A stretch of DNA of 64,000 nucleotides, from contig ADNK01003270.1 in NCBI GenBank assembly GCA_000320545.1, forward strand, positions 1 through 64,000, read 5' to 3'. Positions 17,661-63,453 of this stretch are shown here, one piece after another (the stretch's first letter is position 1; every line of letters starts with the position of its first letter). The translations under genes were made by a program, and so were the position numbers. Below the pieces are notes generated by a model. That model worked only from the letters and a program-made list of their open reading frames with translations, was not told the DNA's origin and searched no databases. This DNA is from Bigelowiella natans CCMP2755. Lineage: Eukaryota; Protista; Cercozoa.

Positions 17661-19421
17661 TGCTGTGTGGAAAGTATTTTCCCCTGTCCGAACGCATAAA
17701 TAATCGTACGATCAACAGTATGGCAGCGGCAGTGTGCAAGAAGGTTGGTGCTCGCCACGTCGTCATTACTGACGTGAACGACTATCGTTTGGACCTGGCA
17801 AAGGTTCTTAGCACTTGTTGTTGTTGTTGATGCTCCGCAGACAAACAAACAAAAACTCGCCGCCTATTAGAATCATGGTGAATATAGTTAAAGATGATAC
17901 GATGGATTGTACGCATTGCGAAGCCGCTAATTCTGCCAGCAGCGTCAGTAGTACTAGCACAGCACTCTGATCGAGCTGTAGACAGATACATTAAGGCAGT
18001 GTGGTGGTGATATTCTCACCAGCTGATGAAAGATGTGTGGCCATTCGTTGCCCGTGCTCTCCATACACTAATTTGATTCGGATCTGTTTGATCAGGAATG
18101 CGGGGCTACGCGCGCAATAAATGTTGGAGGTGTGTCGTGTGATTACAGGCTCTACTTGTAGCTCTGTTGTTGTTTCCGCGAAATAGAAGATATTGTCATT
18201 GGATGGCACGATGATGATATGATTTTAGTGGTGATAATGCTCATGGTAATAGTAATAACCCCCTCCTCCTCCTCCTCCTCCTCCTCCTCCTCCTCCTCCT
18301 CCTGCTACCAATCAAAAAATGAATAATACGTTAAGGAACGATCGCTTAATATACAGGTGCAGACCCAATAGGCACTATCAAGGCGACGATGGACGAGTTG
18401 GGAATGACAGAGGGGTGGGATGTTGGTCTCGAAATGAGCGGTCACGAGTCGGCATTTCACGGTGCTACTATTTCTGCGACGTGATCAAAAAACTACTACT
18501 ACTACCAGCCACTACCATCACCACCACCAGATGTGAATCATTGATGACAATTGCTCATCCTGCCTACGATGATGATGATCATGATAATGACCGTTGCCTC
18601 CTCCTGTTAATGAGTTTCTTCTTTACCTATAAATTCTAGGAATGTTCGAAACGATGAACACAGGTAGGTAGCGTCATCGTCATTCTCGATTTTGTCTACT
18701 TCTTAAATACCACCTTCGCTCGCTTTACGCGTGCGCGCTTGCATGCATACATGTGCGGGAAGCTTATCATGTGTGTATTGGCCTATCTCGATTTCTTCCC
18801 GGAAGGACTCGTAGATGGCGGTGATCTGTCCTTCGTAGTTCTATTGTTTATTTGTTGTCTATTGATGATGAAAGGCGGTCGGATCGCCATGCTGGGAATT
18901 CCCTCGGAGAGCTTCCCTGTGAATTGGGATAGGGTTGTACTGAAGGTAGCGACGGCTCCGACTCCTTTTCCCCTGATTCTCATCTCGCGCGTGTCTTAAA
19001 TGCCGTGCTTATAGATCCCCTTCCCCCATCCCCCCCCCTTCTAATAATCTACTGCGGTCCTCCTAATTTGTACCAGGGCCTTGTCCTCAAGGGTATTTAT
19101 GGTCGGGAGATGTTTGAGACGTGGTACAAGATGCACAACCTTCTCACAAGTGGGCTAGCCAAGGATATTGAACCAATTATCACCCATAGGTATATTTGTA
19201 CGTGCATATTCCCTATCTATAATGAGCCGATCGATGCACGATAGACGACACTGGACGAATGAATATGTTTTCGTTTTCCCACGGTGCTTGTTGAAATAAA
19301 ATGCTGATACTACTTTATGATAATCTTTCCTTGAAACAGATTCGAGGCCGATGATTTTCAGAATGGATTCGATGCAATGCGCAGCGGCAAATCTGGGAAG
19401 GTGGTCCTCTCGTGGACATAA
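15064..19421 (+). CDS. tdh: L-threonine 3-dehydrogenase, Zn-dependent MDR (bacterial Tdh type), about 15 exons, N-terminal organellar-type extension
   Basis: Spliced product [111 protein letters not shown], colinear with E. coli-type Tdh. Confidence 0.96.
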
Positions 19422-20190
19422 TTCGATGCTGGGCTTGCAACGCGATGCGTACGTAGCAACGAAGATTCACTCATTGCAATGGTCAAATCTAGTCGGGTGG
19501 TGCATGGTGACTCATGCTGCCTTTGCATGGATAAGGTCTAGTGTGCACATGCCTATGTTGACTATTCTAGCATTGCATGCCATTTTGCAAAGCAACCATG
19601 AAGATGTGGCACACTGACATTCCGCTCTAGCACTTGCTAGCTTGCCGGCACTAATCAATGATGTCATGGAATCAATATATCAAAGTTGCGAAAGCAAATT
19701 CACATGCAAACGACGTCAACAGCACGCTAGCACGGCCTTCATGCATTGCATCGCATTCCCTCTAGCTAGCTAGCCCTGATCATCCTGCCAGCTCTGGAGC
19801 TCTGGAGATGGCCAGTCCTGGAGTCTGCTGAGTGCACGTGCTGAACATTGCCAGATCAGATCTTCACTACTTCAGGCTGGCAGGAACGATCGGGAGTTCT
19901 GGTCAGTGGTGGCAGTGATGCATGCCGTCATTGTGGTGCTGCTGCTCTGCAGTGCTGTCGTCACTCTGGCACTGCTAGACTGACATGGAACACGCTAGCA
20001 CGCACCGCAGACAGTCACACTGGAGCATCCATCGATGCCATCGCTCTCGTTTAGGAAAAAAAAACACTGCTCCAGTGCTCACAACTGAGTCGGAGCACAC
20101 TTCAATGGAAAAATCGATGACTAACGGTGTGGAAAGCACCCCTGATGGCTGGCGGTGCCCTTTTTTGCACAGCTTCCAGGAGGCTAGCCA

Positions 20191-20516
20191 TGTAGCGCGT
20201 ACCACTACGCGGGCACAAGTCACGTGCGACAACAAAGGGGTTGTCGCGGATATAGAATATAGATAACGTAGATATTAATACAGCATAGGCACGTGGGTTC
20301 CGGCGGGACTCATGGCAGCACACCGGAAGTGTGCTGCCCCACGTGCGGCGGCATTCGCGAAAGCTTCGCGAATGATTACGCAGTGCACGATTTAATAAAA
20401 ATATAATCTTTAATAAAAATAAACACAACTCTTCAAAAGGAAGCAAACGTGCCTTTCCCCCCCCCTGCCTACTTGTGCACGTAGCGCCTCGGCCTGTGAA
20501 CACCTTACGCGCAACA
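20191..20516 (+). repeat. 5' LTR
   Basis: Direct repeat of 25581-25906. Terminal inverted repeat TGTAGCGCGTA/TACGCGCAACA and AATAAA signals. Confidence 0.97.
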
Positions 20517-20521
20517 ACCTT

Positions 20522-20540
20522 TGGCTTCCACACACGGGAA
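20522..20540 (+). promoter_or_regulatory. Putative primer-binding site (tRNA identity uncertain, Glu/Asp-like 3' end)
   Basis: TGGCTTCCACACACGGGAA lies 5 nt after the 5' LTR. Its complement ends ...TTCCCGTGTGTGGAAGCCA, a CCA-terminated tRNA-like end. Confidence 0.55.
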
Positions 20541-20555
20541 ACGATTTGACTAACA

Positions 20556-23500
20556 ATGTCACAGCAGCTAGAAGAACAGCAGGACTTTGGCTCGCAGGCC
20601 GTGCAAGGGCACGAGCAGAAACAGGAAAGGAAGGGCGATACGGACGCTAAGGAAGGAGGAGGAACACCTCCACAGGCACCGCCGGGACCAGCACCCGGGA
20701 TTAAGAAAGCAGATGCAGCAGCAGAGGCACTGGAGAACTTCTACGAGGCGGACGACGAGGACGTGGCCGCCGAAAGCAAGAAGGTCGTAATGGCATTACG
20801 AGCCTTGCGACCCAGGGCGAGCAACTACGCCAAACTGAAAGTATCGATAGAATACAAGTATCAGACACATGATGTTTGGGCAGCTATCATGCAGGACATC
20901 ATGGATTACGAAGCAGACTTACCTCCAGAGTGGGCAGCTTTGTTTAGGAACGACGGGGGTCTGGGCGCCTCGCGGGGGACGACCCAGAGCACCGTCAAGC
21001 AGCAGCAGCCGGTACAGCGGAACACCCAGTTCATGTCTGTTAAAACAGCACCGGTTATGATAACGAAATACAACGGGAAAAGAGGTGAGGCAAGGAGGTG
21101 GTGGAAGAACGCTAGGAGTATACTCTGCGACTTTACCCCTAACCCCACCGAAAACGACAAGCTCAAATGGCTAGCTATAATAAAGCAAGCCATGGACCTT
21201 TACGAGACAGGCAGGACCCGGATCAGGCAGCTAGAGAAAATACACACTACAGTTAGTGGGCTACGAGACGTTGAGGCGATAATGAAGGCTTTTGTAAATG
21301 AACAGGATGCTAACTCCCTACCCCAGGCTATTAGAAAATACAGAGCAATGATGCAGCATGAGAGAGAACCTGTTAGAGACTTTGCCACGCGCTTCCAGGA
21401 TATGATCGACGAACTACATGATTTTAATTACAACACAGGTGATGATCAGGCAAGGTTTGAAGAGTTCAAGTTAAAGATAAAGGAATCCACTTACGTTACG
21501 GAGAAAGGCTACACCACGATGGAGGCAGCAGTGCAGGCTATATCCCTACGCGAGCAGGAGCAGGACCGCAAGTTTACCAGCCCTAAGGTACCTGGCATAG
21601 GAAACATTAACGCTATTAAGCCGCAGCGAGACTGGTACAAGGACAGGGAAGGTAACCGACGTTGCGGATACTGCTCACGTAAAGGGAAACACACCGCTAA
21701 AGACTGCAGAGACAGGAAAGAAGGACGACCCAGGATGACGATCAGGCAGCTCAACGAACACTACGAGAAGTTAAAGAGAAAGAAAGGCAGAGGACAAGGA
21801 TATAACAACAGCAAATGGCAAGGCAGCAACAACGGGAAGAACAATAAATATAAGAACAAAAAGCAGAACAGTATCAATGCTATACAGCAGCAGATAAACG
21901 GAATATTAGATCACCTTAAGCAGGCGCCGACGAAGACAGCAGTACCAGCAACGCAGGACCAAGACAAGCCCATGACCCTAGACGACATAAAGAACTTAGG
22001 AGTATGCAACATTAATGACGAAGACGCTAACAGGACTATCAAAGTTGCTATGACCAAGGTTAAAGTTAAAGACAGCTACGGAGACTACAAGAAACTACCT
22101 GCCCTTTGGGATAGTGGCAGCATGCCGAAGTCCTTCATAAGCCTAAGCACAGTAAGAAGGTTAGGACTATTGGATCAAGTGACTAAGAAAGAACGTAAAT
22201 ATGCTCAAGCAGACGGAAGCTCTTCCATGAAGACCGTCGGTGAGCTAATGCTAAAGCTACAGATACCTGGCAGCGACGCGGAGACCCAAATCAAGACCCG
22301 AGTAGCCATGACTTTATCCATGGAACTACTCCTCGGACAGGATGCCCTAGAAAAATTAGGGGGGATCATATCATTCTACAATCACAAGATATACTTTGCT
22401 AAGTTGCCAAAGAAGTCAGGCAGGACCATCAGCCAGAACATGATACGGCTTGACGAGTGGACCTCTGAGTCAAGCGTTAATGCGTTAGAGTTTATGGACC
22501 TAGCGGACAACAAGCTACCTACACCTACCGAGCTACGGAAGAAGAACCCCGGCAAGACCATCCGACAGATAACGGAGCTACTGGACAAGACCCCCCCAGC
22601 TGATGATTGGGATATCGACAAAGGCAAAAAGTACATTAATAAAATATTAAACGAGAAGTACTCTGACATCACCAAGCCGACGACGAAGCCCTCCAGCAAG
22701 CTTACCCCAGTAAAGATCGAGCTAAAGAAGGGATACGAAGAGTGCATCATCAATGACCCAGAACATAGGCGACCGGAAGCGGACTGGGAAAAGATAGAGT
22801 GGCAGATCAATGAATGGGCAAAGGAAGGGAAGATAGAGCCAAGCAACTCACCATGGAACGTGAGACATGTGCTAGCTAAGAAACCTACTTACCCTTTCTT
22901 CCGCCTGGCGCACAACTTCATCCGCCACAACCGAGTAATAAAGAGGATCCAGACACCTACACCAAGGATAGATGACGTTATTGAACACGTCATAGGATAC
23001 AAATACTACTCTTCCCTAGATAAAAATGAATCATACATGCAGACACCCATCCACAAAACCTCCCGCCCCATTACCGCGTTCTCCAGCAGGCACAGGAAGT
23101 GGCACTTCGTCGTATTCCCTTACGGCCTAAGCATATCAGGGGATGCGTTCAGTAGTCAGAACTACAGGGCATACACACATGATGGGATGGCGTCTGTGTT
23201 GTGGGTGTTTGTGTTTGTGTATGTGGATGATGACATAATATGTACCAACACAGTCGTCGCTCAGATCTTCCTCCTGGAAAATATATTTATTAGGTTTGCA
23301 CACTTCGGTTTTACTATTAGACTGCAGAAGTGTACATTCCTAGCTACAAGAATCAAGTGGTGTGGATATTACCTGGAGCAAGGCCGCATCACCCCAAACC
23401 CCGAGAAAGTAGCAGCACTACAGCAAGCCCCTAAACCTAAGAATGCAAAGGAGTTAAAGTCATTCTTGCAGACTGCAGCTTGGATACTACGTAGGTTCTC

Positions 23501-25529
23501 CCCTACCTACGCTAGGACTGCAGCTGCTTTTACTACTGCTTACCGGAAGGAGAACTCTGTAGGCCTCAGCTTCGCTAAGGTGTGGGCCAAGGCTGGCCTT
23601 GATGCCCACTTCGATAACCTAATAAAGTTATGCAGCAACACCCTATTGAATGCTAAGCTAGACACTACTAGACCAGCTACCCTATGGACAGACTGGTCTA
23701 AGCTAGGTATGGCTGCTGTACTTACCCAAGACCAGCAGATCATACGGGTGTGGGGCAGGGCCTGCACAGCAGCTGAGGCCAAGTACAGCCCTACAAAAGG
23801 AGAGTATAAAGCCATGACTGAGGCGCAGAGGAAACTAAGATACTACCTGCTGTCGGTGCCCAGCTTCACCTTAATGACTGACCACAAGCCCCTCCTAGGC
23901 ATCGACCGCAAGCTCGAAGCGCCTAACGATGAGTATGCAGCTATGAGGGCGGACACGGAAGAGTTTAGGGACAAGAGGACAGTGGTCTACGCACCAGGAG
24001 ACAAGCAGCTTGCTGACTATTTCAGCAGGCTGTTCGAAAAGAAAGTCCCTACCCAGGTCACCCCTATGGTTAACGCGATTACCTTCGAGGACGGCGACTT
24101 CCTGCCTGAGCCAGAGGAGCTCCAGCACCTTCAAGAACACCTGGATAAATACAAACACAAGCATGAGGTACTTAGTGATAGGATATATGTATACACTAAT
24201 AATGTTAGGCGTACCTACGTGCCACGGCGGACCAGGGGAGCCCTTCTCTTTACCGCCCATGGACCTGCACACGTAGGAGAAAACCATATCACTGCTCTAC
24301 TCTACCATTACTACTGGCCCTACAAGCTAAAAGAGATAAGGACATACCTGCGTGGCTGCAGGTGCTCCAGCTTGAAGGCGGCAGGCGTCGCCACCAAGGA
24401 GTCCAGCAAGAGCCGTGCATCTAAGAAAATCAAAGCAAGGAACTTCTTAGATATCGTGCAAATTGATGTTTATAAGTACGATGGCTATCACTACCTTACC
24501 TTCGTTGATGTGGCCACTGGAAAGTGCTGGGTTAAAAAGATTATCAAGGTCAACGTTGCTAAGAAGAACAAAGGCTTATATAAGCAGAGGCTTACTAACT
24601 GCTACCGTACCTGGGAGTCTGAGCTCCAGGCTATCCCTGATGAAGTTAGCATAAACAAGATACCAAAGAAGTTACATGTGGATAATGAGACCTCTCTTCT
24701 ACAGCTACCACACCCTAATATTGATGCCTCACCTGTATACTATGCCCAGTCCAACTCCAAGGTAGAGCGACTCCACCGCACCTTGGCCAACCTAAGCAGG
24801 ATAAATAGCACCACACCAGACAAGATACAAGGGTTAGTAAACGACACCTTCACGTCTGGGGGAGGTATCAAGGATAAGGAGAGGGAAGAAGGCGACGACA
24901 ACGACGACGATACCGAGAGCGAAGACGAGAAGGTCCCGTACGATGGCCGAGTTCTAAAGGAAGGACAGTATGTTAGGGCCAAGGTAAATCTGAGATCGAG
25001 AAATAAACAAGACCCCTTCTGGGGTGGCGTTGCAAAGGTTACCGAGAGGAAGGGGAGGAAGCAGTACTACATCTATGATGGGAACAGGGTCACCTTGCGC
25101 CACATCAGTCACCTAAAGAATTATGATATCGGTGAGAAGCTCCTAGAGGATGTTAAAGTAAACCCTACTGTGTGGGAGCGAGCAATGCCTTGTTTAGGAC
25201 CCCGACCTAAGTTCGATGTGGAATATGGAAACAATAAGGTCAGGGTGAACGACGATTGGCGCATGAAGATTGTCTATCTAGGCTACCCTGGATTACGAAA
25301 TATGGAGAGGGTAGCTATGAAAATAAAGGACGGAAAATATCAGCTACTCTACCTAGCTGTTCCCGACTTACCCTTTGAGCACTGGTATAAGGTCCTGGGG
25401 GACCTTGATGCAGAGGGCTGGTATGGACACGAACCTAAGGACGAAGGTGAGTTCTGGGTAAGCGACAAAGGAGATAAGGTTAGAGAGGAATCTATTACCT
25501 GGTGGTTGGTGAAGTTCCGAAAGCGATGA
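20556..25529 (+). CDS. Gag-Pol polyprotein (1657 aa) with C-terminal adenine-methyltransferase-like extension
   Basis: Zinc knuckle CGYCSRKGKHTAKDC (CX2CX5HX4C), protease ALWDSGS, RT (SLDKNESYMQ, FPYGL, YVDD), RNase H (WTDWS, YSPTKGE, TDHKPL, LADYFSR), integrase HHCC plus IVQID/LHVDNE/SNSKVER, an SH3-like module KQDPFWGG, then about 130 extra aa. Confidence 0.97.
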   Translation: MSQQLEEQQDFGSQAVQGHEQKQERKGDTDAKEGGGTPPQAPPGPAPGIKKADAAAEALENFYEADDEDVAAESKKVVMALRALRPRASNYAKLKVSIEYKYQTHDVWAAIMQDIMDYEADLPPEWAALFRNDGGLGASRGTTQSTVKQQQPVQRNTQFMSVKTAPVMITKYNGKRGEARRWWKNARSILCDFTPNPTENDKLKWLAIIKQAMDLYETGRTRIRQLEKIHTTVSGLRDVEAIMKAFVNEQDANSLPQAIRKYRAMMQHEREPVRDFATRFQDMIDELHDFNYNTGDDQARFEEFKLKIKESTYVTEKGYTTMEAAVQAISLREQEQDRKFTSPKVPGIGNINAIKPQRDWYKDREGNRRCGYCSRKGKHTAKDCRDRKEGRPRMTIRQLNEHYEKLKRKKGRGQGYNNSKWQGSNNGKNNKYKNKKQNSINAIQQQINGILDHLKQAPTKTAVPATQDQDKPMTLDDIKNLGVCNINDEDANRTIKVAMTKVKVKDSYGDYKKLPALWDSGSMPKSFISLSTVRRLGLLDQVTKKERKYAQADGSSSMKTVGELMLKLQIPGSDAETQIKTRVAMTLSMELLLGQDALEKLGGIISFYNHKIYFAKLPKKSGRTISQNMIRLDEWTSESSVNALEFMDLADNKLPTPTELRKKNPGKTIRQITELLDKTPPADDWDIDKGKKYINKILNEKYSDITKPTTKPSSKLTPVKIELKKGYEECIINDPEHRRPEADWEKIEWQINEWAKEGKIEPSNSPWNVRHVLAKKPTYPFFRLAHNFIRHNRVIKRIQTPTPRIDDVIEHVIGYKYYSSLDKNESYMQTPIHKTSRPITAFSSRHRKWHFVVFPYGLSISGDAFSSQNYRAYTHDGMASVLWVFVFVYVDDDIICTNTVVAQIFLLENIFIRFAHFGFTIRLQKCTFLATRIKWCGYYLEQGRITPNPEKVAALQQAPKPKNAKELKSFLQTAAWILRRFSPTYARTAAAFTTAYRKENSVGLSFAKVWAKAGLDAHFDNLIKLCSNTLLNAKLDTTRPATLWTDWSKLGMAAVLTQDQQIIRVWGRACTAAEAKYSPTKGEYKAMTEAQRKLRYYLLSVPSFTLMTDHKPLLGIDRKLEAPNDEYAAMRADTEEFRDKRTVVYAPGDKQLADYFSRLFEKKVPTQVTPMVNAITFEDGDFLPEPEELQHLQEHLDKYKHKHEVLSDRIYVYTNNVRRTYVPRRTRGALLFTAHGPAHVGENHITALLYHYYWPYKLKEIRTYLRGCRCSSLKAAGVATKESSKSRASKKIKARNFLDIVQIDVYKYDGYHYLTFVDVATGKCWVKKIIKVNVAKKNKGLYKQRLTNCYRTWESELQAIPDEVSINKIPKKLHVDNETSLLQLPHPNIDASPVYYAQSNSKVERLHRTLANLSRINSTTPDKIQGLVNDTFTSGGGIKDKEREEGDDNDDDTESEDEKVPYDGRVLKEGQYVRAKVNLRSRNKQDPFWGGVAKVTERKGRKQYYIYDGNRVTLRHISHLKNYDIGEKLLEDVKVNPTVWERAMPCLGPRPKFDVEYGNNKVRVNDDWRMKIVYLGYPGLRNMERVAMKIKDGKYQLLYLAVPDLPFEHWYKVLGDLDAEGWYGHEPKDEGEFWVSDKGDKVREESITWWLVKFRKR

Positions 25530-25572
25530 AGGTCTAAGGGAATAAGGAAGGAAGGAAGGAGCAACGTGACTT

Positions 25573-25580
25573 GGGGGAGG
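25573..25580 (+). promoter_or_regulatory. Polypurine tract
   Basis: GGGGGAGG immediately before the 3' LTR. Confidence 0.85.
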
Positions 25581-25906
25581 TGTAGCGCGTACCACTACGC
25601 GGGCACAAGTCACGTGCGACAACAAAGGGGTTGTCGCGGATATAGAATATAGATAACGTAGATATTAATACAGCATAGGCACGTGGGTTCCGGCGGGACT
25701 CATGGCAGCACACCGGAAGTGTGCTGCCCCACGTGCGGCGGCATTCGCGAAAGCTTCGCGAATGATTACGCAGTGCACGATTTAATAAAAATATAATCTT
25801 TAATAAAAATAAACACAACTCTTCAAAAGGAAGCAAACGTGCCTTTCCCCCCCCCTGCCTACTTGTGCACGTAGCGCCTCGGCCTGTGAACACCTTACGC
25901 GCAACA
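25581..25906 (+). repeat. 3' LTR
   Basis: Identical by eye to 20191-20516. Confidence 0.97.
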
Positions 25907-26008
25907 GCCAGTCAGGACCAGAGGAGGGTTGATGACATCTTCACGATTTTCCGTTTTTTGCCACGGAAACCGTGTCCACCAAAACAACAAACCCCAGCAC
26001 GATTGCGA

Positions 26009-26069
<61 letters not shown>

Positions 26070-26246
26070 CATGACCCGCCCACATGCAGATCGATGTCAC
26101 ACAATTTCATCGACGATCACTGGTGATTTCTTCATGACGACTGCCTGTCTTGTCAATTGATGCATGCAAAGTCCTCGAGTTTTGGGAGCTCTCAAGAGAC
26201 TCTCTCATTGTTTTCGTTCAGGAAAAAGATGAGTTGGTGCTGCCGA

Positions 26247-28188
26247 ATGGAAATTGACAAAAATCCTGAGGATTTAGCAAGATTTCTGTTTGAATTAAAA
26301 AGTCGGCGACAGTACCTGCACACTGCATACTTGGAACTTGGGGGGGGGAAGGTTGTGTTTCAAGGATCAAGTTGTTTTGTCCACAATGACTCTATGTTTC
26401 ACTGTTCAACACCGAACACTGAACGTGTTCTCGTTGTTGCTAAGATGTTCACGTTTTGAAGGAGCGCATGGATAAGTACCATCAAGTTAACAACAAAAGG
26501 AACGAAATCCAGAGTGCAATATACGAGTCAGTCTAGCAACAGTCACAGTCACATCAGTTTATAACCGGATTCTGAAGCGCGTTGTTTATGTTGCGCAGAT
26601 CAAAGTCAAACGGAATCAACAATGGAAGCGACTGCCTGATTGCCGCCGGACAAATTCAAGAGAAGAGGATGGAACGTGGTTTCCATGAAGACAATGACAA
26701 TAACAACCATGAAGGTTCTATAGAGTCTAATCTTCGCCGAAATTGGAAACCAGGGGATGTCGTTGAGGTGTATTCTGATATTCGATTGAGCTGGTACCCA
26801 ACTCAAATAAGGCAAATTATTCCTAGCAAGGTGCAATTGCGGTAGATTCTATGTATAGTGCTAAAATCAACTGTTCCACCAGAAGTCAAGAAGCAAAAGT
26901 GGGCGAAGGACAATGAAAGAAGACGATATTATTGTGACCAAGTCGAAGTCTGTTCGTAGGGGCGATCACTATTCAATCCGGCTAGCCTCTGGTCAGTCCT
27001 CTTTTCAACTATGAGCTAGGTAAATGCCTAACCACCGTTGCTGACACAACACATCTCAGAAGCGAGTAAGGCAAAATACTGGGCTAAGAAAAACAGCGGC
27101 AAAAAGAGTAAAAATAAAAGGCGAGGTGGTTCGAACAGCAATGGCAATGCTCGTGCTCACAATGAAAAACCACCTCTCAGAATCACAGTGTTGGGAGAAT
27201 CAGGCACAATCATCAGAAATCATCCCGAGATTTCACCTATGAGAAATGACTTGTATCAGACTCATTGTGATACAATACGAATTGCAAGTGGGTCCAATAA
27301 CAATGACGCTTTTGAAGTGACTCAGCCGCCCCCTGAAGAATGGAAAAAGGGCCAATACGTATTATATCAATCCAGCGATACTGGAAAGTGGCACCATGCA
27401 CGTTTTATGGGTGTAAACTCACTTGGGAACGTGGATTTAGATCTTTGCGAGAACGTTCAAAGATCACAAATATGCGTGTATGAACCACGTGTAACCGTTG
27501 CAGAGCAAATAAGGGTATCGCATGAAAGATTATTAAATGCTTACATATATTTACAAATTGCTATTATAGGCTCAAATACAAGCACTTTCAGAGTCATGTA
27601 TCAGAATGAAAGAATCAAATCAACGCACCAAAACATGGATTCGGACCAGGAACTCCCGCTACTCTAAGTATGTTTTTCAATATAGAGATGCAGTGTAATT
27701 CGTAATTCAGCTCAATATTTAGGATTATTCAAAATTTGCAATCTAAAGTGAAAAGAATCAGTTCCGAAAATGAAAAGCTGGAGAGAAAACGATCGCCACT
27801 GTCTCAAAATGGAATGACTGACCATTTTGAAGAGCGAAAGCGGGATTTAAAGAATTCATCGCACGCAAGGAATATGGTGAAACGAGTTCGTGCTGGGACT
27901 TCACGCTCTCGAAGGCGCCATGAGAAATCAAACTGGATGTGGATTATTGGTGTTGCTGCTGGAGCTGCATCAGCAATGTGCATCGTTTCGTTTTTGCTTC
28001 CACAGCCACAGCTAGAAATTGCACAAAATCAGAGTCCACACGCCTCGCCTCAGATCCAACGCAATTCCGTTATGGTGGGACATCAGGCGTTGAGCCCCGT
28101 GGTTGTCCTTCCTCAGAGCTTGAGAGCGGTACCAGTTGAAGTTCTTTGGGCAATTGCGAAACCCTCGTTGTTGTCATGGAAGCGTTAA
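26247..28188 (+). CDS. Hypothetical protein with two Tudor/Agenet-like modules, a coiled coil and a C-terminal hydrophobic segment (multi-exon)
   Basis: WKPGDVVEVYSDIRLSWYPTQIRQI and WKKGQYVLYQSSDTGKWHHARFMGV fit the Agenet/Tudor pattern. TM-like segment WMWIIGVAAGAASAMCIVSFLL. Mostly short GT-AG introns. Confidence 0.6.
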
Positions 28189-28463
28189 TGCATGCATGGC
28201 TTCGGCGGTAGCTTAATAAAATATAACGAGAACTTTATATATGCCTTTGCTCGTAGGACATGGCACACATGACACACATGCGCTCTAGCACGCATCTCTA
28301 GATCTGCTACTGCACTTCAATCACATCTAAACATGCGGGCGGTGTTTGAATTAATTCGCGTTGTTGAGCCAATCATTCGTGTTCAATGCATCACATGGCT
28401 AGACGATCTAGTTCTAGAGTTGTGTAGACATGCAAGCATGCATACGTAGATGAAAATCTAAAT

Positions 28464-28491
28464 CTAGCTAGCTAGCTAGCTAGCTAGCTAG
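28464..28491. repeat. (CTAG)7 tandem palindromic microsatellite
   Basis: CTAG repeated 7 times in the intergenic region between convergent genes. Confidence 0.95.
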
Positions 28492-32661: not shown

Positions 32662-36928
<4,267 letters not shown>

Positions 36929-45297: not shown

Positions 45298-46383
45298 GAA
45301 GCAAGACCGTTTTTTTGGGCAAATTAGTTCATATACATAGTACAGCAGTACTGAAGAGGGTATCACACCGTAGCTGCCGATATGTATGTGGTATAATGCG
45401 GAAGCATAGTATTGCATATAATCACATACACGCAAAGTCATACGCACACTGTACACGCACACAGATAGTAAGTCTAAATAAATATGCTGTGTGTATGCAT
45501 GTCAATTGTATCATACCAGAACGTCTTCTTCAATTATATCGCGTCAGTCCAACTAGCTAGCAGTTGCTTGTAAGTGCGTTGTACTACGACAATGCATTGC
45601 ATGAGGATGCTTTGTGTGTTTGCAAAGTCTCAAATCACAATGCGTAAGATGTGCTCGCTTCGCTGTTGTTGCATTTTCTTACATTGTGTGTAATTGTCGC
45701 TTCGCCCGCATCGCATATATGCATGGTCTAGTGGTGTATGTTGAATGTGCGTATCGCAGCAAGGTGGAGGCGTGACTTCTGCAGCTTTGCTGTTCAGCAC
45801 AGCCATGCAGTCTGCTAGTCAGCTCCAGAGCTGCGCTGCATCGCATGGGCATGCTAGCATGCTGGACATCATCGGACGTGCTAACTCACCCATGTCTTCC
45901 CCTGACAGGAGCAACCAGGGGGAAACCAAGGGTTTGTTTCACGTCACCGTGCACGAGCGCGGACGACTGCAGAGCTGGCTAGCTGGAGCGCTGGAGCCCA
46001 GTGCTCTTTTTTTGTTTGGCTCATGCAATGACAATCAGCTCGCGTCGCGCGTTCCTCTCCACGCTCAAACGCATGATTCTCGACTGCATCAAAAGCGCAC
46101 GCAACAAACATGGAGTTTGAGGCGCATGTTATGTTTAGCATGGTGGTTGGGACACAACATGCACAAAAACGCTCGAGCTCGATGCGATGTGGGAAAACAG
46201 ATGCCACGGAGCCTGAAGTGAATTTTCACCTGCGACAAGGAATTACGGAAGTCGCTGGATGAAAATGCCATGAGAATCTGTGCAAACAGAATGGATACGA
46301 CTCTACTCACAATTCACAGCCGTGCGACGTGCTGTCCTATCTACGATGCTACCAACACAAGGCACTGCTAGTTCCCTGGCAGC

Positions 46384-49078: not shown

Positions 49079-50120
49079 GGAGGAAGAAGAAGATGTGGTG
49101 TGTGGTGGAAATTGCAGAGCTGCAATGAGACTGCCATTAACATGATGACGATAATGAATTGCATCTATATGAGAACAATATATATCACTTATGCTTCTAT
49201 TTTAGGTAGGTTACCATCGTTTTATTGCAAATCTATATCACTATCCTCAAAAACACATCATCATCATCATCATCATCATCATCATTATCCCTTTCATTCG
49301 TTATTACAAACACATAGAGGCGTTTGAGAACACCCCTTCACGCATCACAACTTCTTATTCTTTATCCCCCCCTCCCCCCCGTTCTCCTTATGACTTCTCC
49401 TCATCTTTCTCCACAACAACGTCATTGCTGTCATCATCAGGAAAGTATTACCAGGCTTGTCCATCAGAAGGTGGTCACGTCGATTTCGGGCCAAGGAATG
49501 AGGAGCAATCTCATATTCTCGATTATCTGCGGAACAAGTACAATTCTAGCCAAGGGGGCTCTCCTCACGTATCTGTGGAGAGACTGTGTAGCGGCAAAGG
49601 AATCGAAGAGATCTACCGCTACCTTCGCCACCGGTATCCCGAAAACGTGCACCGGGAGTCTGATGCCGAGTTTGATCGTGCCGTCGAGAAGGCTGTAGTT
49701 GTGACTGAGCACGGCAAGAAGTGCTTGCTTTCGGCCAGTAGTAGGGGAATTGGAATCCTCGGTGCTAAATTATTCAGCAGCAATGGGGGCGATGTCGGTA
49801 GCAGTAGCAGGAAGAATGAGAGCCTGTTAATGCAACAGGCCTTGGAGCTATTCGTAGCTATTTACGGTGCCGAGGTTGGAAATGCAGCTTTGAAGTTTCT
49901 TCCGTTTGGGGGGATATATATAGGGGGGGGCATCGCGGCGAACCTCAAGGAGTACCTGCAGCTCTCGCCGACGTTTCTATCGTGTATTCGTGACAAGGGG
50001 AAAATGGGTCAAATTGTGCGAAAAATGCCAATCAAGCTAATCCTTTCCGATGGAGTCGCTATTCGAGGGGCTGAAACTGTTGCAAGGCGAAAGTTGCAGG
50101 CTTTTCTGGACGATATATAG
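46384..50120 (+). CDS. glk: Glucokinase (bacterial Glk type) with N-terminal signal/transit extension, multi-exon
   Basis: LAGDIGGTNARLAI, AVAGPV, LINDF, VIGAGTGLGE, PSEGGHVDF, VSVERLCSGKGI, GGIYIGGGIA. Probable first exon MKRHTLSAYVPLLVIVAVACFCLATSLFA (start less certain). Confidence 0.93.
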
Positions 50121-50573
50121 CATATATTTTTCGTGCTGCTTGCTTTGACGAAGCTAGCGGCTTTCTTCGAGTATGTTATAAATTCGTTCGGCGACTAGGT
50201 CTTTGATACTTGTTACTGCGTTTTTAAAAAATTGCGCTTGGCAGGCCTAAGTGTAGCACGCTGTTGACATCACATCTGCTGCCTGTGCATGTCATTGCAT
50301 CTACACACGCGCTTGGCTCTGTTCACAGCTCCGTCAAACCCGGTAACGACGGGGTTGTGAACAGTGCAGCGCTTTGCGACGCGCTTTGAAGCAGTAGGCG
50401 GTTGCAGTTGGTCAAAGAAAAGTCATCAGAACTTGTCCGATGGCCAAACCTCAAAAAATGACCGAAACATTGACCCAAATGTCCATTTCCAAGGCCTCAG
50501 TGAGCGCGCAAAGTGTGAAAATTCACACCCGTTGTGCAGAGGATGCACGCTGCGCGTTTGTTCTCTAACAATA

Positions 50574-50649
50574 TGCTATGAAAGAAAAGAAAGAACGTGT
50601 GGATCACAATAAAAAACGTCAATTGCAAAACCTCCAAGCTGCATCAGGA
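50574..50649 (+). repeat. 76-bp perfect inverted copy of RRS1 exon segment 52740-52815
   Basis: Exact reverse complement, flanked by AATA on both sides (50570-50573, 50650-50653). Confidence 0.95.
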
Positions 50650-51044
50650 AATAGTTTTTCCACAGCAAATGCACTGGTCATTGTTGGAGCATCATCAATC
50701 GCCAGCTAACAATGTGACAACATGACGATGCGCATGGCATCGAGCGAGCATGCATGGCAAGCGGATGACTGTGGCAAGCACATCCAGCACACATCTGATG
50801 ATTTCGGCTACGAGAGCATGAAAGAACTCCGCAGCTAACATTAGACTCGGTGTTGACGTGGCAATTAGGCAAATAGGCATAGCAGACAGAATAGCTTGCA
50901 CAGCAATGAGCATCGTAGAATAATGTGAGATGTATGCATCATAGCTTCATTTTAGATAGAGATGAGCAGTAATTTCGTCCTCACTAGAGATGGATTGACG
51001 ATCCCCGATTCCTTACAAAACAATGCGATTTCCCTTGCAGCTAT

Positions 51045-57037: not shown

Positions 57038-58653
57038 AACTGTGTAGCTGGATGTGGAAATAAGTTAGAATCATAAGAGAATGGCCTGGCCATTAACCAC
57101 AGGCTACTCATTATTTCTCTTCATGAATTAAAATTGAAAATATATTTATCTTTATAGCTAATGGATTTCTAAAGGAAAAAAACAGCGCATTCACACGGGA
57201 TGAGCCCAACGGATGCGCACATTTGTAGAGGGGATAATTGCCAGCATGCACGGACCCTTTTCTTTACTATCCATCATATAGATAACCGCCTTTATTGGAT
57301 TGTTAGATGGCGTCGTTGCCTCTCTCCACAGCGCTAGAGCATGTACTGTGTCTATGGTAGAAGGCGCTACAGTCGCCGTCGCTAGCGCAGCGGGGAGGCA
57401 AGTCCGTGCAGAAATGCGATGCATGCATGGCATGATCCACAGCACAGCTTGACAGCCACTTCACTCGGCACCAACACGGACTACAGTCGTCAATGCACAG
57501 ACACGTGGCAGACATCATTTCTACGCGCACGCACACATGTCTAAATGCGCTGCATGAACGAACCCATGACGAAGCGTGCTAGCTAGCTAGCGTGGCCAGA
57601 AGTGCACATGCTAGCATGGGTGTCGATCTGTGTCTGCACACACGTCTAGACGTCCCTGCGACACAACTCTAGAACTCTAGAACTGCGCATGCTAGCTAGC
57701 ATGCATGCTGTCACGTCGTGCATGTCTAGATGTGCAGTGACATGGCTAGCAGGCAGCACAGCTAGAAAGCTAGACATGCAGCGTGTCTAGGTGTGCTCTC
57801 AGGTTCCTTGCAATGTCGACACGGCATCCGACATTGCATGCTGCACGCACGTTGTCTGGCAATGTGTTCATTGTGCAAGGTGCATGTGTCTGACCAACGC
57901 ACATTTGGCGCACCACTCCACACCACACGCTTGCTGCGTGTGCAATGACACCGATGCACCTGCCTAGCTAGCTAGCTGCGCACAACACTTGGAACAAGCT
58001 GGGCAACCTAGCAATGATGCATGTCTGCGGGTGTGAAAACAAAACAAAAAATTGTGTTGTTGATCGTTGCACACTTGTCCCGTTGCGATGGACCGCTGCA
58101 CGTGCTGCTCCAGTGAGTGTCATTGGCACGCATAGACAGTACTAGAGTGTCAGAGCTGTGGCAATGTGGTGCCAGCAATGAACCTAGCAACAGATGACGT
58201 GTGGGCCATGGAGGTGCTCACTTGTCGCAGCGTCTCAAACTAGTGGCATGAAGAATCACCGGGACAATCCGATTTCAAATGAAATACAACACAATTCAAC
58301 ATGTTATTTACAACCACACGTTGTCGTAGTTTGAAAATGAGTATTTTTTACCAAAACAAGAGTTACATTAGTCATTGCCTTTGGAGAATCATCATCTATC
58401 AAGCACCCATTCATCCCTCCTCCATCCTTATCAAGAACCAGATAAACAACCACTACGACGTTTCGGGTAATCTATATACATTGATGAGGGTTATTTGATC
58501 TGAATTCACGTCTGAATCCTCGAAATCAGTGATGGTGAACAGAAACAGTCATCATCTCCATTTTGCCATCTTCTTGTTTTTTGTTGGTCTGTATAGATCT
58601 ACTTTACCGCTAACGAAATTTTATTTATTATGCACTTTTCATCCACGCAGAAG

Positions 58654-62194: not shown

Positions 62195-62830
62195 GTATCG
62201 TATGACCGAAATGGCAAGCATCCGAAGAAGCCTTCAATTCTAGAATTCTAGCCAGGATCTGCCATTTATACAATGCAAAGCTTTGCAGAGGAGTAGAGTT
62301 CGCCCGGGGTGTACATAAATTGCATCGATGAATGTTTAATTCACGTGATTTTTTCACGAATCGCCCCAAATATGACAAAATCAGCTTCGTAAACATGTTG
62401 CATGGCTTTCCAGCACACGCATCATTTGCATGGCGTTCGTTGTTTGATCATCATGCTAGCCAGTGCATGCGCACATTGTCGCAGCATCGCACCGCCATCA
62501 CATGGCATGTTGTGTGCGGATCAATGATAGGCATAGCCTACTCTAGCTAGTCTAGTACCAGCACGCACTAGCAGCAGCGCTGTCATGCGCTCATGCGATC
62601 AATTTGGGTGACGTCGCCATGGCGTAGACTTCCTTCACTTGCTAGTTTGCTTGCGTGTCGCAGGTGACGTACATGGCTAGCTAGCTAGCCCCCTAATTTT
62701 GATGCTAGCGCTAGATCTGCGTGATCGATTTTGCTTTAAAGACACTCGGGCTGTACGTCGTTGAGGCTTGCATGATTGGGGGGTTGTTGTCCATGTCGTA
62801 GTGCAAGGATCATTCAACAATAGACATACG

Positions 62831-62870
62831 TATATATAATATATATAATATATAATATATATAATATATA
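62831..62870. repeat. AT-only TATATAA-like microsatellite
   Basis: tatatataatatatataatatataatatatataatatata. Confidence 0.9.
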
Positions 62871-63453
62871 CTGTGTCTATAGTTTCAAATTTGCTGAATC
62901 AGTCTAGCAGTGTGAGTAAGACATTGCATGACACTGTGCTGGAAAACACAGGTGTGGATCAAATTGGAGTGATTCACAAGTTTGGCTAGTTGGGCCTCAC
63001 GATCACTTGCTTCAGACGGCGGGAGGACGTTCCCCTAGTCCCGGAAAGAAAACGCGAAGGTGCCTGAACATTATTTGCAGGCACAACAATCACAGTGGTC
63101 ATCGCTGACTGCGCACACTGTCTAACTGTAACTGAATGTGTGTCATTGCTGTTGCACGCGCGTTCAGGGTTGCTATCATGCAATCAAAAGCTCGAATTCG
63201 TTGTGCGTTCATTGATTGCTGCTGCCGTGAGCGCGCAACCATATGATGATGAAACGTGTGGCATCGCAGTGAACGTACGCACGCTCTGTCACAGTGCAGC
63301 GTGCAACCTGCATGACGAACCAACACAATGAGCAACATGAAATTGGCATCATAACGTTTTCAATGGCGGCTAATCTTGTTATCATATTTCGACATGGACG
63401 ACATACGGAGGCCTCACGTCGGGAATAAGACGAAATGATGGGCTGCATCAATA

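What the first reader, a model, noticed from the sequence alone, without database searches (positions are those of the whole stretch)
19681..26274. Young TA-rich retrotransposon inserted into the centre of a TpA desert
Seen: the left flank 19681-20190 has 10 TA (7 CTAG plus the half-sites CTAC, TTAG, CTAA) and the right flank 25907-26274 has none in 368 bp. In contrast the 326-bp LTR has about 24 TA, none in CTAG, the two LTRs are identical and the ORF is intact. The depletion stops exactly at the GCCA TSDs. Inference: the desert predates the insertion and acts as an internal clock, with the element not yet mutated. The element may preferentially target these zones, possibly through its MTase-like domain, which would link the two main findings. 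The survival hierarchy CTAG > CTAH/DTAG > DTAH fits a strand-specific context rule.
Basis: partly seen in the sequence, partly recalled or inferred. Interest (0 to 1): 0.8.

Follow-up and report, generated by a model that had tools for sequence, protein, structure and literature searches.

The report
Retrotransposon that targets TpA-poor islands
An intact, very recently amplified gypsy-type retrotransposon of the alga Bigelowiella natans sits in a stretch of DNA almost free of the dinucleotide TA. Its sister copies across the genome sit in such stretches about twelve times more often than chance, so the element appears to aim its insertions at a previously undescribed kind of non-coding island.

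Summary
The two 326-bp LTRs are identical, the TSD is GCCA, and the 1657-aa gag-pol ORF is intact. The left flank has 10 TA (7 in CTAG) and the right flank has 0 TA in 368 bp.

The genome is Bigelowiella natans. The family has 656 exact LTR ends and 249 exact internal tags, and copies differ by about 0.05%.

In 67 unrelated flanks, TpA O/E is 0.25 next to the element and rises to 0.8 beyond 3 kb. About 61% of flanks have 3 or fewer TA in the nearest 200 bp, against 5-6% of background windows (p 1e-12 to 1e-18). Only TA is depleted. CA/TG, CTAG, CATG and CACGTG are enriched. The islands are non-coding and lack tRNA or Rfam genes.

The integrase ends in a conserved 134-aa domain whose confident model matches only adenine-methyltransferase (Dam-like) folds, but the NPPY catalytic motif is not kept. 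A role for this domain in targeting is inference.

The "clock" idea could not be tested because the family has almost no old copies. The 26 substitutions seen show no TA bias.

The scan had noted similar deserts on another piece of this genome.

The parts
19322..20190 (.). Left half of the TpA-depleted, CTAG/CATG-rich non-coding island that received the insertion
   Evidence: TA-poor windows 19322-19531 and 19564-20199, with 10 CTAG and 8 CATG. By eye, a + strand ORF ends at 19419-21.
20187..20190 (+). Target-site duplication GCCA, left copy
20191..20516 (+). 5' LTR, 326 bp, TG...CA, TA-rich (24 TA, none in CTAG)
   Evidence: At least 40 LTRs elsewhere in the genome are 100% identical to it.
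20517..20546 (+). Region where a primer-binding site is expected. It contains TGG 6 nt after the LTR. Not matched to any tRNA.
   Evidence: Sequence only; inference
20556..25529 (+). Single gag-pol ORF of 1657 aa. Landmarks: CCHC knuckle 21663-21707; protease DSG 22104-22121; RT 22947-23372 (YVDD at 23220-23234); RNase H 23607-23909; integrase H2C2 24219-24362; D, D, E candidates 24456-24776.
   Evidence: Pfam; translation; coordinates. The same 1659-codon open frame is seen in most other copies.
24846..24929 (+). Acidic, disordered linker after the integrase core
   Evidence: AF2 model, pLDDT below 50 for residues 32-45 of the 258-aa query
24969..25124 (+). SH3-like integrase C-terminal domain
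   Evidence: VIA-align: PFV integrase 4bac_A, Z 8.0, 69 aa aligned, rmsd 3.8. MLV IN CTD and RSV IN are also listed.
25125..25526 (+). Terminal 134-aa alpha/beta domain with a Dam-like (adenine methyltransferase) fold and a degenerate catalytic motif. The conserved signature is W-L-G-Y-P-G ... V-P-[DE]-L ... F-W-x-D ... T-W-W.
   Evidence: AF2 pLDDT 96.4. All top-50 VIA hits are class-I MTases. The nearest Atlas clusters carry PF05869 Dam or RVT_1. It is conserved in 54 relatives.
25550..25580 (+). Polypurine tract (GAAGGAAGGAG...GGGGGAGG) abutting the 3' LTR
   Evidence: read from sequence
25581..25906 (+). 3' LTR, identical to the 5' LTR
25907..25910 (+). Target-site duplication GCCA, right copy
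25907..26327 (.). Right half of the TpA-depleted island. It includes a (CA)n(GA)n microsatellite at about 26010-26068.

Best explanation
This is one copy of a very young, intact and transcribed Ty3/gypsy-type LTR retrotransposon family of Bigelowiella natans. The family has at least 250 internal regions and about 650 LTRs. It integrates preferentially into pre-existing non-coding islands of roughly 0.5-1 kb.

The islands are specifically poor in TpA. They are rich in CA/TG and GC steps and in short purine-pyrimidine palindromes (CACGTG, GTGCAC, TGCGCA, TGCA, CATG, CTAG). They are most likely regulatory or promoter-type intergenic DNA.

The preference is regional, spanning about +/-400 bp. That is far wider than an intasome footprint. 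Locally there is only a weak palindromic T-G-C-A preference in the 4-bp TSD. The intasome is therefore probably guided by a chromatin or DNA feature of the islands, through tethering or open chromatin, rather than by a sequence word.

The integrase carries, after its SH3-like domain, a conserved Dam-like domain that has lost the canonical N-P-P-Y pocket. It is the obvious candidate for a tethering or reader module.

Shown: the element's anatomy, copy number and youth, the location bias, the non-coding nature of the islands, and the fold of the extra domain. Inferred: that the bias arises at integration, that the islands are promoters, and that the Dam-like domain is involved.
For: Anatomy.

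Organism: JGI Bigna1 names on identical proteins.

Copy number: 656 exact hits to a 30-mer at the LTR end and 249 to an internal 30-mer.

Youth: at least 40 LTRs are 100% identical, and there are 26 substitutions in 56.8 kb of copies.

Transcription: an identical MMETSP transcript exists.

Location bias in 67 non-redundant flanks that are unrelated to each other:
- TA O/E by distance is 0.25 (0-50 bp), 0.30, 0.35, 0.40, 0.39 and 0.50 (400-500 bp), then 0.61, 0.69 and 0.73, reaching 0.81 at 3-6 kb.
- Only TA is depleted. AA/TT is 1.05-1.1, AT is 1.0 and CG is 0.8-0.9.
- Upstream sides: 20 of 33 have 3 or fewer TA per 200 bp. Downstream sides: 21 of 34. Background is 5.7%, or 9.8% when GC-matched, with p 1e-12 to 1e-18. 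Non-coding-like background is 5.2%.

Islands are non-coding. Period-3 power has a median of 1.0 and no window exceeds 4, against a median of 5.4 in long ORFs. Coding signal first reappears beyond 600 bp.

Motif content: CACGTG is 7.6x enriched.

No tRNA genes and no Rfam families lie near the sites.

The extra domain.
Against: - No gene models or chromatin data were available, so 'promoter' is unproven. Pfam found nothing in 18 of the 20 neighbouring ORFs tested; its only hits were a glucokinase match and a sub-threshold prefoldin match, both far from the insertion. My codon model could not orient the neighbours.
- Purifying selection could contribute to the bias, because insertions into exons or short introns would be lost at once.
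- About 15-25% of insertions are not in TA-poor DNA.
- Only LTR sites on contigs C88-C668 were sampled, namely the first 100 listed.
- The near-identity of copies may be partly inflated by consensus calling of repeats in a Sanger assembly.
- Nothing ties the Dam-like domain to targeting. It has no sequence-level match to any MTase.
Confidence: 0.7

Rival explanations
1. Integration is essentially random. The enrichment in TpA-poor islands is a survivorship effect: in a gene-dense, intron-rich genome only insertions into harmless intergenic islands persist.
For: The genome is intron-rich with short exons. No coding signal lies within 600 bp of the insertions. Insertion-free zones around genes are expected under selection.
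Against: TA-poor windows make up only about 5% of non-coding-like background, yet they hold 61% of insertions. Most non-coding DNA near the same sites (1-6 kb away) has normal TA and is not used. The copies are practically identical, which leaves little time for anything but removal of lethal insertions. The minimum in TA sits exactly at the junction.
Confidence: 0.15
2. The islands are made by a regional, context-dependent TA>TG/CA (A>G) mutator that spares CTAG. The element is simply too young to have been hit, and older copies would decay.
For: The TA deficit (-37 per kb) is roughly balanced by the CA+TG gain (+50 per kb), and G+C is higher. The survival order CTAG > half-sites > DTAH fits a rule in which each strand is protected by a 3' G.
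Against: - CTAG is enriched in absolute terms (1.6x), not merely spared.
- GC steps (+25 per kb), CACGTG (7.6x), GTGCAC and TGCGCA are enriched as well. TA decay cannot create these.
- Among 26 substitutions in copies, including one LTR about 2.7% diverged, only 3 are TA>TG/CA. That is close to the 14% of bases that lie in TA.
- No diverged fragments of the family were found in 340 kb.
Confidence: 0.2
3. The element itself makes its flanks TA-poor, through integration-coupled or element-directed local mutagenesis or modification. On this view the desert is a consequence of insertion, not a target.
For: The depletion is centred on the junction and symmetric on both sides. The element encodes an MTase-like domain.
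Against: Islands of the same composition exist without any element (45719-46337, 57369-58304; 2.5-6% of background). The elements have essentially zero divergence, whereas the flanks would need more than 70% of their TAs changed. The flanks also differ in many other k-mers.
Confidence: 0.03

Closest known systems
Tf1 of Schizosaccharomyces pombe, and gammaretroviruses such as MLV. These are Ty3/gypsy-type or retroviral integrases that aim at nucleosome-poor Pol II promoters or CpG-island-like regions through a host tether (Sap1 and BET proteins respectively). This is from my own knowledge of the literature, not tested here.
   Same: Regional (hundreds of bp) rather than sequence-word preference. 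Targets are non-coding and compositionally distinct islands. The local target consensus is only weakly palindromic. The integrase C-terminus is the part that carries extra modules.
   Different: The target is defined here by TpA depletion with CTAG/CATG/CACGTG enrichment, in a rhizarian alga. There is no chromodomain. The extra module has a Dam-like fold. The promoter identity of the islands is not demonstrated.
DAM-LTR retrotransposons: Ty3/gypsy elements that captured a DIRS-derived Dam domain (bioRxiv 10.64898/2026.05.21.726589)
   Same: A Ty3/gypsy polyprotein carries a small Dam-type fold that corresponds to the C-terminal half of a class-I adenine MTase. The nearest Atlas structures are PF05869 Dam clusters and RVT_1 clusters that partly carry Dam.
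   Different: PF05869 does not detect it: only 1 of 30 relatives hits, at E 0.03, and there is none in the genome by six-frame scan. The N-P-P-Y pocket that the preprint reports as conserved is replaced, by G-[YFH]-P-G or [DE]-L-x-[CF]. The domain is at the extreme C-terminus after the SH3-like domain. Rhizaria are not among the lineages in that paper. That paper does not address integration sites.
Chromoviruses: Ty3/gypsy elements with an integrase chromodomain that guides integration to marked chromatin
   Same: An accessory domain is fused to the integrase C-terminus in a gypsy-type element that shows region-specific insertion.
   Different: No chromodomain was found by Pfam or by fold. The targets are unique, non-repetitive islands rather than repeat-rich heterochromatin.
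Ty3, Ty1 and Dictyostelium DGLT-A/TRE: elements that target Pol III genes
   Same: Strong, non-random insertion preference that avoids coding DNA.
   Different: No tRNA gene within 6 kb of 20 flanks or in the window, and no Rfam family.

Membership tests
Ty3/gypsy (Metaviridae) LTR retrotransposon | Direct LTRs bounded by TG...CA and flanked by a short target-site duplication | tested here: met
   The 326-bp LTRs are identical, run TG..CA, and are flanked by a 4-bp GCCA TSD. 4-bp TSDs are seen at most other copies.
Ty3/gypsy (Metaviridae) LTR retrotransposon | Polyprotein order gag - protease - RT - RNase H - integrase | tested here: met
   Pfam places gag-asp_proteas at 513-599, RVT_1 at 798-939, RT_RNaseH at 1036-1118 and Integrase_H2C2 at 1222-1269. 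The CCHC, DSG and YVDD motifs are visible in the translation.
Ty3/gypsy (Metaviridae) LTR retrotransposon | Integrase catalytic core (rve, D,D-35-E) | tested here: inconclusive
   Pfam rve was not reported. H2C2 falls below the curated cut-off (18.5-20.3 bits against 25.5). Candidate D, D, E residues were read by eye only. The SH3-like CTD matches PFV, RSV and MLV integrases by fold.
Ty3/gypsy (Metaviridae) LTR retrotransposon | tRNA-complementary primer-binding site and polypurine tract | tested here: inconclusive
   The PPT is present next to the 3' LTR. The PBS region was not matched to a tRNA.
Chromovirus | Chromodomain at the integrase C-terminus | tested here: not met
   No chromo family was found at E up to 10. 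The C-terminal folds are SH3-like plus MTase-like.
DAM-LTR / eukaryotic TE Dam domain (PF05869) | Sequence membership in PF05869 Dam | tested here: not met
   There is no hit for this protein at E up to 10. One of 30 relatives hits at E 0.032. There is no PF05869 match in the genome.
DAM-LTR / eukaryotic TE Dam domain (PF05869) | Small Dam-type fold (beta-sheet flanked by helices, C-terminal half of a class-I MTase) | tested here: met
   Model pLDDT is 96.4. VIA hits:
- PCIF1 6irx_A: Z 7.0, 115 aa, rmsd 3.4
- KsgA 3uzu_A: Z 6.2, 116 aa
- T4 Dam 1q0s_A: Z 4.9, 93 aa
All top-50 hits are MTases. Atlas PF05869 clusters have TM by query 0.67-0.69. The Z values are modest, so this is fold similarity, not proof of homology.
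DAM-LTR / eukaryotic TE Dam domain (PF05869) | Conserved catalytic V-Y-x-x-N-P-P-Y/F pocket (as described in 10.64898/2026.05.21.726589) | tested here: not met
   This copy reads I-V-Y-L-G-Y-P-G and, later, V-P-D-L-P-F. The family consensus is W-L-G-[YFH]-P-G and V-P-[DE]-L-x-[CF]. No Asn/Asp-Pro-Pro-aromatic is conserved. Which loop is structurally equivalent to the pocket could not be checked residue by residue.
DAM-LTR / eukaryotic TE Dam domain (PF05869) | Host encodes AMT1 (MT-A70) and has 6mA | tested here: inconclusive
   The six-frame PF05063 scan found nothing, but the control genomes did not ring either and introns split domains. No paper on 6mA in B. natans was found.
Region-targeting LTR elements (Tf1-like, promoter-directed) | Insertions concentrated in a defined class of non-coding region far above chance | tested here: met
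   61% against 5-6% of windows, p 1e-12 to 1e-18 on independent sides.
Region-targeting LTR elements (Tf1-like, promoter-directed) | Target regions are Pol II promoters or nucleosome-free regions | not testable with these tools
   No annotation, TSS or chromatin data could be reached. There is only indirect support: the regions are non-coding and G-box CACGTG is 7.6x enriched.
Pol III-gene-targeting elements (Ty3, Ty1, DGLT-A) | Insertions next to tRNA or other Pol III genes | tested here: not met
   No tRNA and no Rfam family was found in 119 kb of flanks plus the window.

The most novel reading that the evidence does not exclude
The catalytically degenerate Dam-like domain at the integrase C-terminus is a reader or tether. 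It would guide the intasome to TpA-poor, CTAG/CATG/CACGTG-rich islands. That would make it a new class of integration-targeting module derived from an adenine methyltransferase. The islands themselves would be a so far undescribed promoter or epigenetic compartment of chlorarachniophyte genomes.
Probability: 0.25. Interest if true: 0.8.

Novelty: new variant of a known kind. Interest (0 to 1): 0.62.

Why it matters
Targeted integration is how retroelements coexist with compact genomes, and the few known tethers all come from yeasts, Dictyostelium and vertebrate retroviruses. This family offers a natural example in Rhizaria with several useful properties:
- It has hundreds of essentially unmutated insertions.
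- Its target is recognisable from sequence alone, by TpA depletion that spares CTAG.
- It carries an integrase-fused domain of the Dam type that has only just been recognised in LTR elements, here in a form that profile searches miss and that has lost the catalytic signature.

It gives a concrete handle on two open questions: what the TE-borne Dam domains do, and what the TpA-poor islands of B. natans are. The element also marks the islands independently of any annotation.

Tried and rejected
- **Gene context of the islands.** A self-trained codon-usage model was too weak on short exons, and almost no confident ORF lies within 4 kb of the sites. Splice-site hexamer counts gave no strand signal. 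Pfam on 20 neighbouring ORFs gave only a glucokinase hit and a weak prefoldin hit far from the site. Looking up a JGI model for annotated neighbours returned no record.
- **Pol III or ncRNA targeting.** Rejected.
- **A fixed-distance sequence motif next to the junction.** Nothing survives multiple testing. There is only a weak T-G-C-A TSD preference.
- **Up/down asymmetry of the depletion relative to element orientation.** None found.
- **Sequence-level identification of the terminal domain.** Pfam, PDB phmmer and profile, PHROGs, and the protein-atlas feature search all returned nothing. A profile word search found only B. natans copies and fragments.
- **Older copies for the clock test.** No diverged fragments were found in about 340 kb.
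- **A sister family.** A sister family (P0015) with ~3 copies at 92-100% identity was located but could not be fetched.
- **Literature.** No paper on B. natans retrotransposon targeting, TpA islands or 6mA was found.
Full report
**1. The observation**

- The two LTRs (20191-20516 and 25581-25906) are 326 bp and identical, and GCCA is duplicated on both sides.
- The left flank 19681-20190 has 10 TA against 27 expected from composition. Seven are in CTAG; the rest are CTAC, TTAG and CTAA.
- The right flank 25907-26274 has none against 24 expected. It belongs to the longest TA-free run of the 64-kb window.
- The LTR has 24 TA, none in CTAG.
- The internal part has 349 TA against 311 expected.
- Outside the element the window has TA O/E 0.79.
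- The ORF 20556-25529 is open for 1657 codons.

**2. What the element is**

Pfam finds a retroviral-type protease, RVT_1, two RNase H models and the integrase H2C2 finger, in that order. The translation shows a CCHC knuckle, D-S-G, Y-V-D-D and candidate D, D, E residues. A polypurine tract abuts the 3' LTR. This is the Ty3/gypsy arrangement.

Proteins identical to parts of the ORF carry JGI 'Bigna1' names, so the genome is Bigelowiella natans. Several JGI gene models are chimeras of this element with neighbouring genes.

**3. A very young, large family**

- A 30-mer at the LTR end has 656 exact matches in the 91-Mb assembly, and an internal 30-mer has 249.
- The 40 best LTR matches are all 100% identical.
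- Across 56.8 kb of copies in hand there are 26 substitutions (0.05%), most of them in two older LTRs.
- Most copies keep the full 1659-codon frame.
- An identical MMETSP transcript exists.
- The near-identity may be somewhat inflated by how a Sanger assembler calls repeats.

**4. The insertion preference**

I took the LTR sites in the order the search listed them (contigs C88-C668), without regard to composition. That gave 67 non-redundant flanks. They are unrelated to each other, apart from one 216-bp repeat shared by two of them.

TA O/E rises smoothly with distance from the junction:

| Distance from junction | TA O/E |
|---|---|
| 0-50 bp | 0.25 |
| 50-100 bp | 0.30 |
| 100-200 bp | 0.35 |
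| 200-300 bp | 0.40 |
| 300-400 bp | 0.39 |
| 400-500 bp | 0.50 |
| 500-750 bp | 0.61 |
| 750-1000 bp | 0.69 |
| 1-1.5 kb | 0.73 |
| 3-6 kb | 0.81 |

The depletion is specific to TA. AA/TT, AT and CG stay at 1.05-1.1, 1.0 and 0.8-0.9, while CA/TG rises to 1.5-1.6.

I treated upstream and downstream sides as two independent samples. In the nearest 200 bp, 20 of 33 upstream sides and 21 of 34 downstream sides have 3 or fewer TA. The comparison values are:
- 5.7% of background windows
- 9.8% of GC-matched windows
- 5.2% of windows without coding periodicity

The p values run from 1e-12 to 1e-18.

The depletion is symmetric with respect to element orientation. About 15-25% of insertions lie in ordinary DNA.

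**5. What the islands are**

- They carry no three-base periodicity. The median power is 1.0 and no window exceeds 4, against a median of 5.4 in long ORFs. Coding signal first reappears beyond 600 bp.
- They contain microsatellites and are enriched in purine-pyrimidine palindromes. CACGTG is 7.6x enriched, GTGCAC, TGCGCA and GCACGC about 4x, and TGCA, CATG and CTAG 1.6-2.1x.
- CTAG holds 23% of all TA near the junction, against 5% further away.
- The proximal/distal ratio by context is 1.59 for CTAG, 0.23-0.48 for half-sites and 0.15-0.31 for the rest.
- Islands of the same kind occur without any element, for example at 45719-46337 and 57369-58304. TA-poor coding exons exist too, but they lack CTAG and CATG.
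- No tRNA genes or Rfam families lie near the sites.
- In this window the island lies between the end of a + strand ORF (stop at 19419-21, read by eye) and + strand ORFs that start near 26.6 kb.

I could not orient neighbouring genes in general. 'Promoter or regulatory island' is therefore an inference from composition and the G-box, not a result.

**6. Mutation or selection?**

Per kb, the islands differ from distal DNA as follows:

| Dinucleotide(s) | Change per kb |
|---|---|
| TA | -37 |
| CA+TG | +50 |
| GC | +25 |
| CG | +9 |
| AT | -14 |
| AA+TT | -20 |

The GC and palindrome gains and the absolute CTAG excess do not.

The clock test is not possible in this family, because it has almost no old copies. 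Of the 26 substitutions seen, 3 are TA>TG/CA, which is about the share of bases lying in TA. I leave the origin of the islands open and lean towards constraint rather than a mutator.

**7. How the preference most likely arises**

The 4-bp TSD shows only a weak T-G-C-A tendency, and no motif sits at a fixed distance. The biased zone spans about +/-400 bp. That points to a regional cue, either a tether or open chromatin.

Survivorship alone is a weaker explanation. The abundant TA-normal non-coding DNA 1-6 kb from the same sites is not used, and the copies are essentially unmutated.

An element-induced desert is excluded by the unoccupied islands and by the zero age of the copies.

**8. The integrase tail**

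An exhaustive search with residues 1400-1657 found 54 relatives at 30-44% identity. The match is always at the C-terminus of RT-RNase H-integrase proteins. The relatives include two other B. natans families and marine metagenome contigs.

With these as an alignment, AlphaFold gives pLDDT 89 for the tail and 96.4 for the last 134 residues alone. The tail consists of an acidic disordered linker, an SH3-like domain, and then an alpha/beta domain. The SH3-like domain matches PFV integrase (Z 8.0, 69 aa, rmsd 3.8).

For the alpha/beta domain, every one of the 50 best structural matches is a class-I methyltransferase, mostly N6-adenine enzymes:
- PCIF1 6irx_A: Z 7.0, 115 aa, rmsd 3.4
- KsgA: Z 6.2
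- ErmC', DIMT1 and Mtq2
- T4 Dam: Z 4.9
- EcoDam, CamA, TaqI and DpnM

In the ESM Atlas the nearest clusters are phage PF05869 Dam proteins, eukaryotic RVT_1 proteins that partly carry Dam, and PCIF1, with TM by query 0.64-0.73. The Z values are modest, so this is a fold assignment, not proven homology.

No sequence method sees the similarity. One relative touches PF05869 at E 0.03.

A May 2026 preprint describes 'DAM-LTR' elements in chlorophytes, an ochrophyte, ichthyosporeans, Pyropia and Euglena. It reports a conserved V-Y-x-x-N-P-P-Y pocket, negative activity assays in E. coli, and nothing on Rhizaria or on integration sites.

Here the conserved loops read W-L-G-[YFH]-P-G and V-P-[DE]-L-x-[CF], so the canonical pocket is not kept. 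The secondary-structure order is strand, loop, helix, strand, helix, strand, strand. I could not superpose residues to confirm it.

Whether the host has AMT1 is undecided.

**9. Verdict**

An MTase-like domain exists at fold level, but its link to targeting is inference. The 'clock' cannot be read from this family.

The thing is a new variant of known kinds: region-targeting gypsy-type elements and TE-borne Dam domains. It lies in an unsampled lineage and has an unusual, sequence-recognisable target.

The scan's first-stage notes had flagged similar deserts elsewhere in this window and on another piece of the genome. I used them only as leads.

Noticed in passing
window 28455-28490; also 57578-57592 and 57965-57980: Perfect (CTAG)n microsatellites inside CTAG/CATG-rich islands. 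Slippage of CTAG repeats may contribute to the CTAG excess of the islands.
   Followed up: no
window 45719-46337, 57369-58304, 62317-63351: Unoccupied non-coding TA-poor islands with many CTAG and CATG (for example 22 CTAG and 20 CATG in 936 bp). TA-poor coding exons, for example 35189-36193, lack these words, so the two kinds can be told apart.
   Followed up: partly
P0005, P0007, P0008 (JGI Bigna1 models 86460, 86656, 72851): Annotated B. natans gene models are chimeras of this element's ORF with neighbouring host genes (lipid desaturase-like, WW-domain and others). They are likely annotation artefacts caused by insertions next to genes on the same strand.
   Followed up: partly
G000 C3553:5456-6886, C1192:32619-34049, C3143:14035-15015: A sister family (JGI 67480, 42% identical to this element over RT-IN-tail) with the same Dam-like tail has about 3 copies at 92-100% identity. 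It would be the natural older family for the clock and targeting tests. It could not be fetched.
   Followed up: no
L020:1-215 and L044:37-243 (flank coordinates, proximal first): Two independent insertion sites share an 84%-identical 216-bp repeat right at the junction. It is possibly a small repeat that itself lives in the islands.
   Followed up: no
G000 C581 (8268-13183 and 16310-22025), C509 (52407-58058, 58957-59282), C265, C394: Several contigs carry two copies within 1-20 kb, and some copies are internally deleted (LTR spacing 4590, 4868 or 5113 instead of 5390). This suggests local insertion hot spots.
   Followed up: no
G000 C554:44235-49946 (L045/L046); C265:38531-44246 (L022/L021): At C554 the flanking tetranucleotides do not match (CACA/GCGT). 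At C265 the 5' flank ends GTCA and the 3' flank begins CACA, so only 2 bp (CA) are shared. This suggests rearrangement between copies or imprecise ends.
   Followed up: no
window 49425-50120 (+): The C-terminal exon of a glucokinase gene (Pfam PF02685, E 1e-42), followed directly by a TA-poor stretch at 50255-50835.
   Followed up: no
L067 (G000 C225:65611-65936): One LTR is about 2.7% diverged (8 substitutions in the LTR), the oldest copy seen. Three of its changes destroy a TA, only one of them by a transition.
   Followed up: partly
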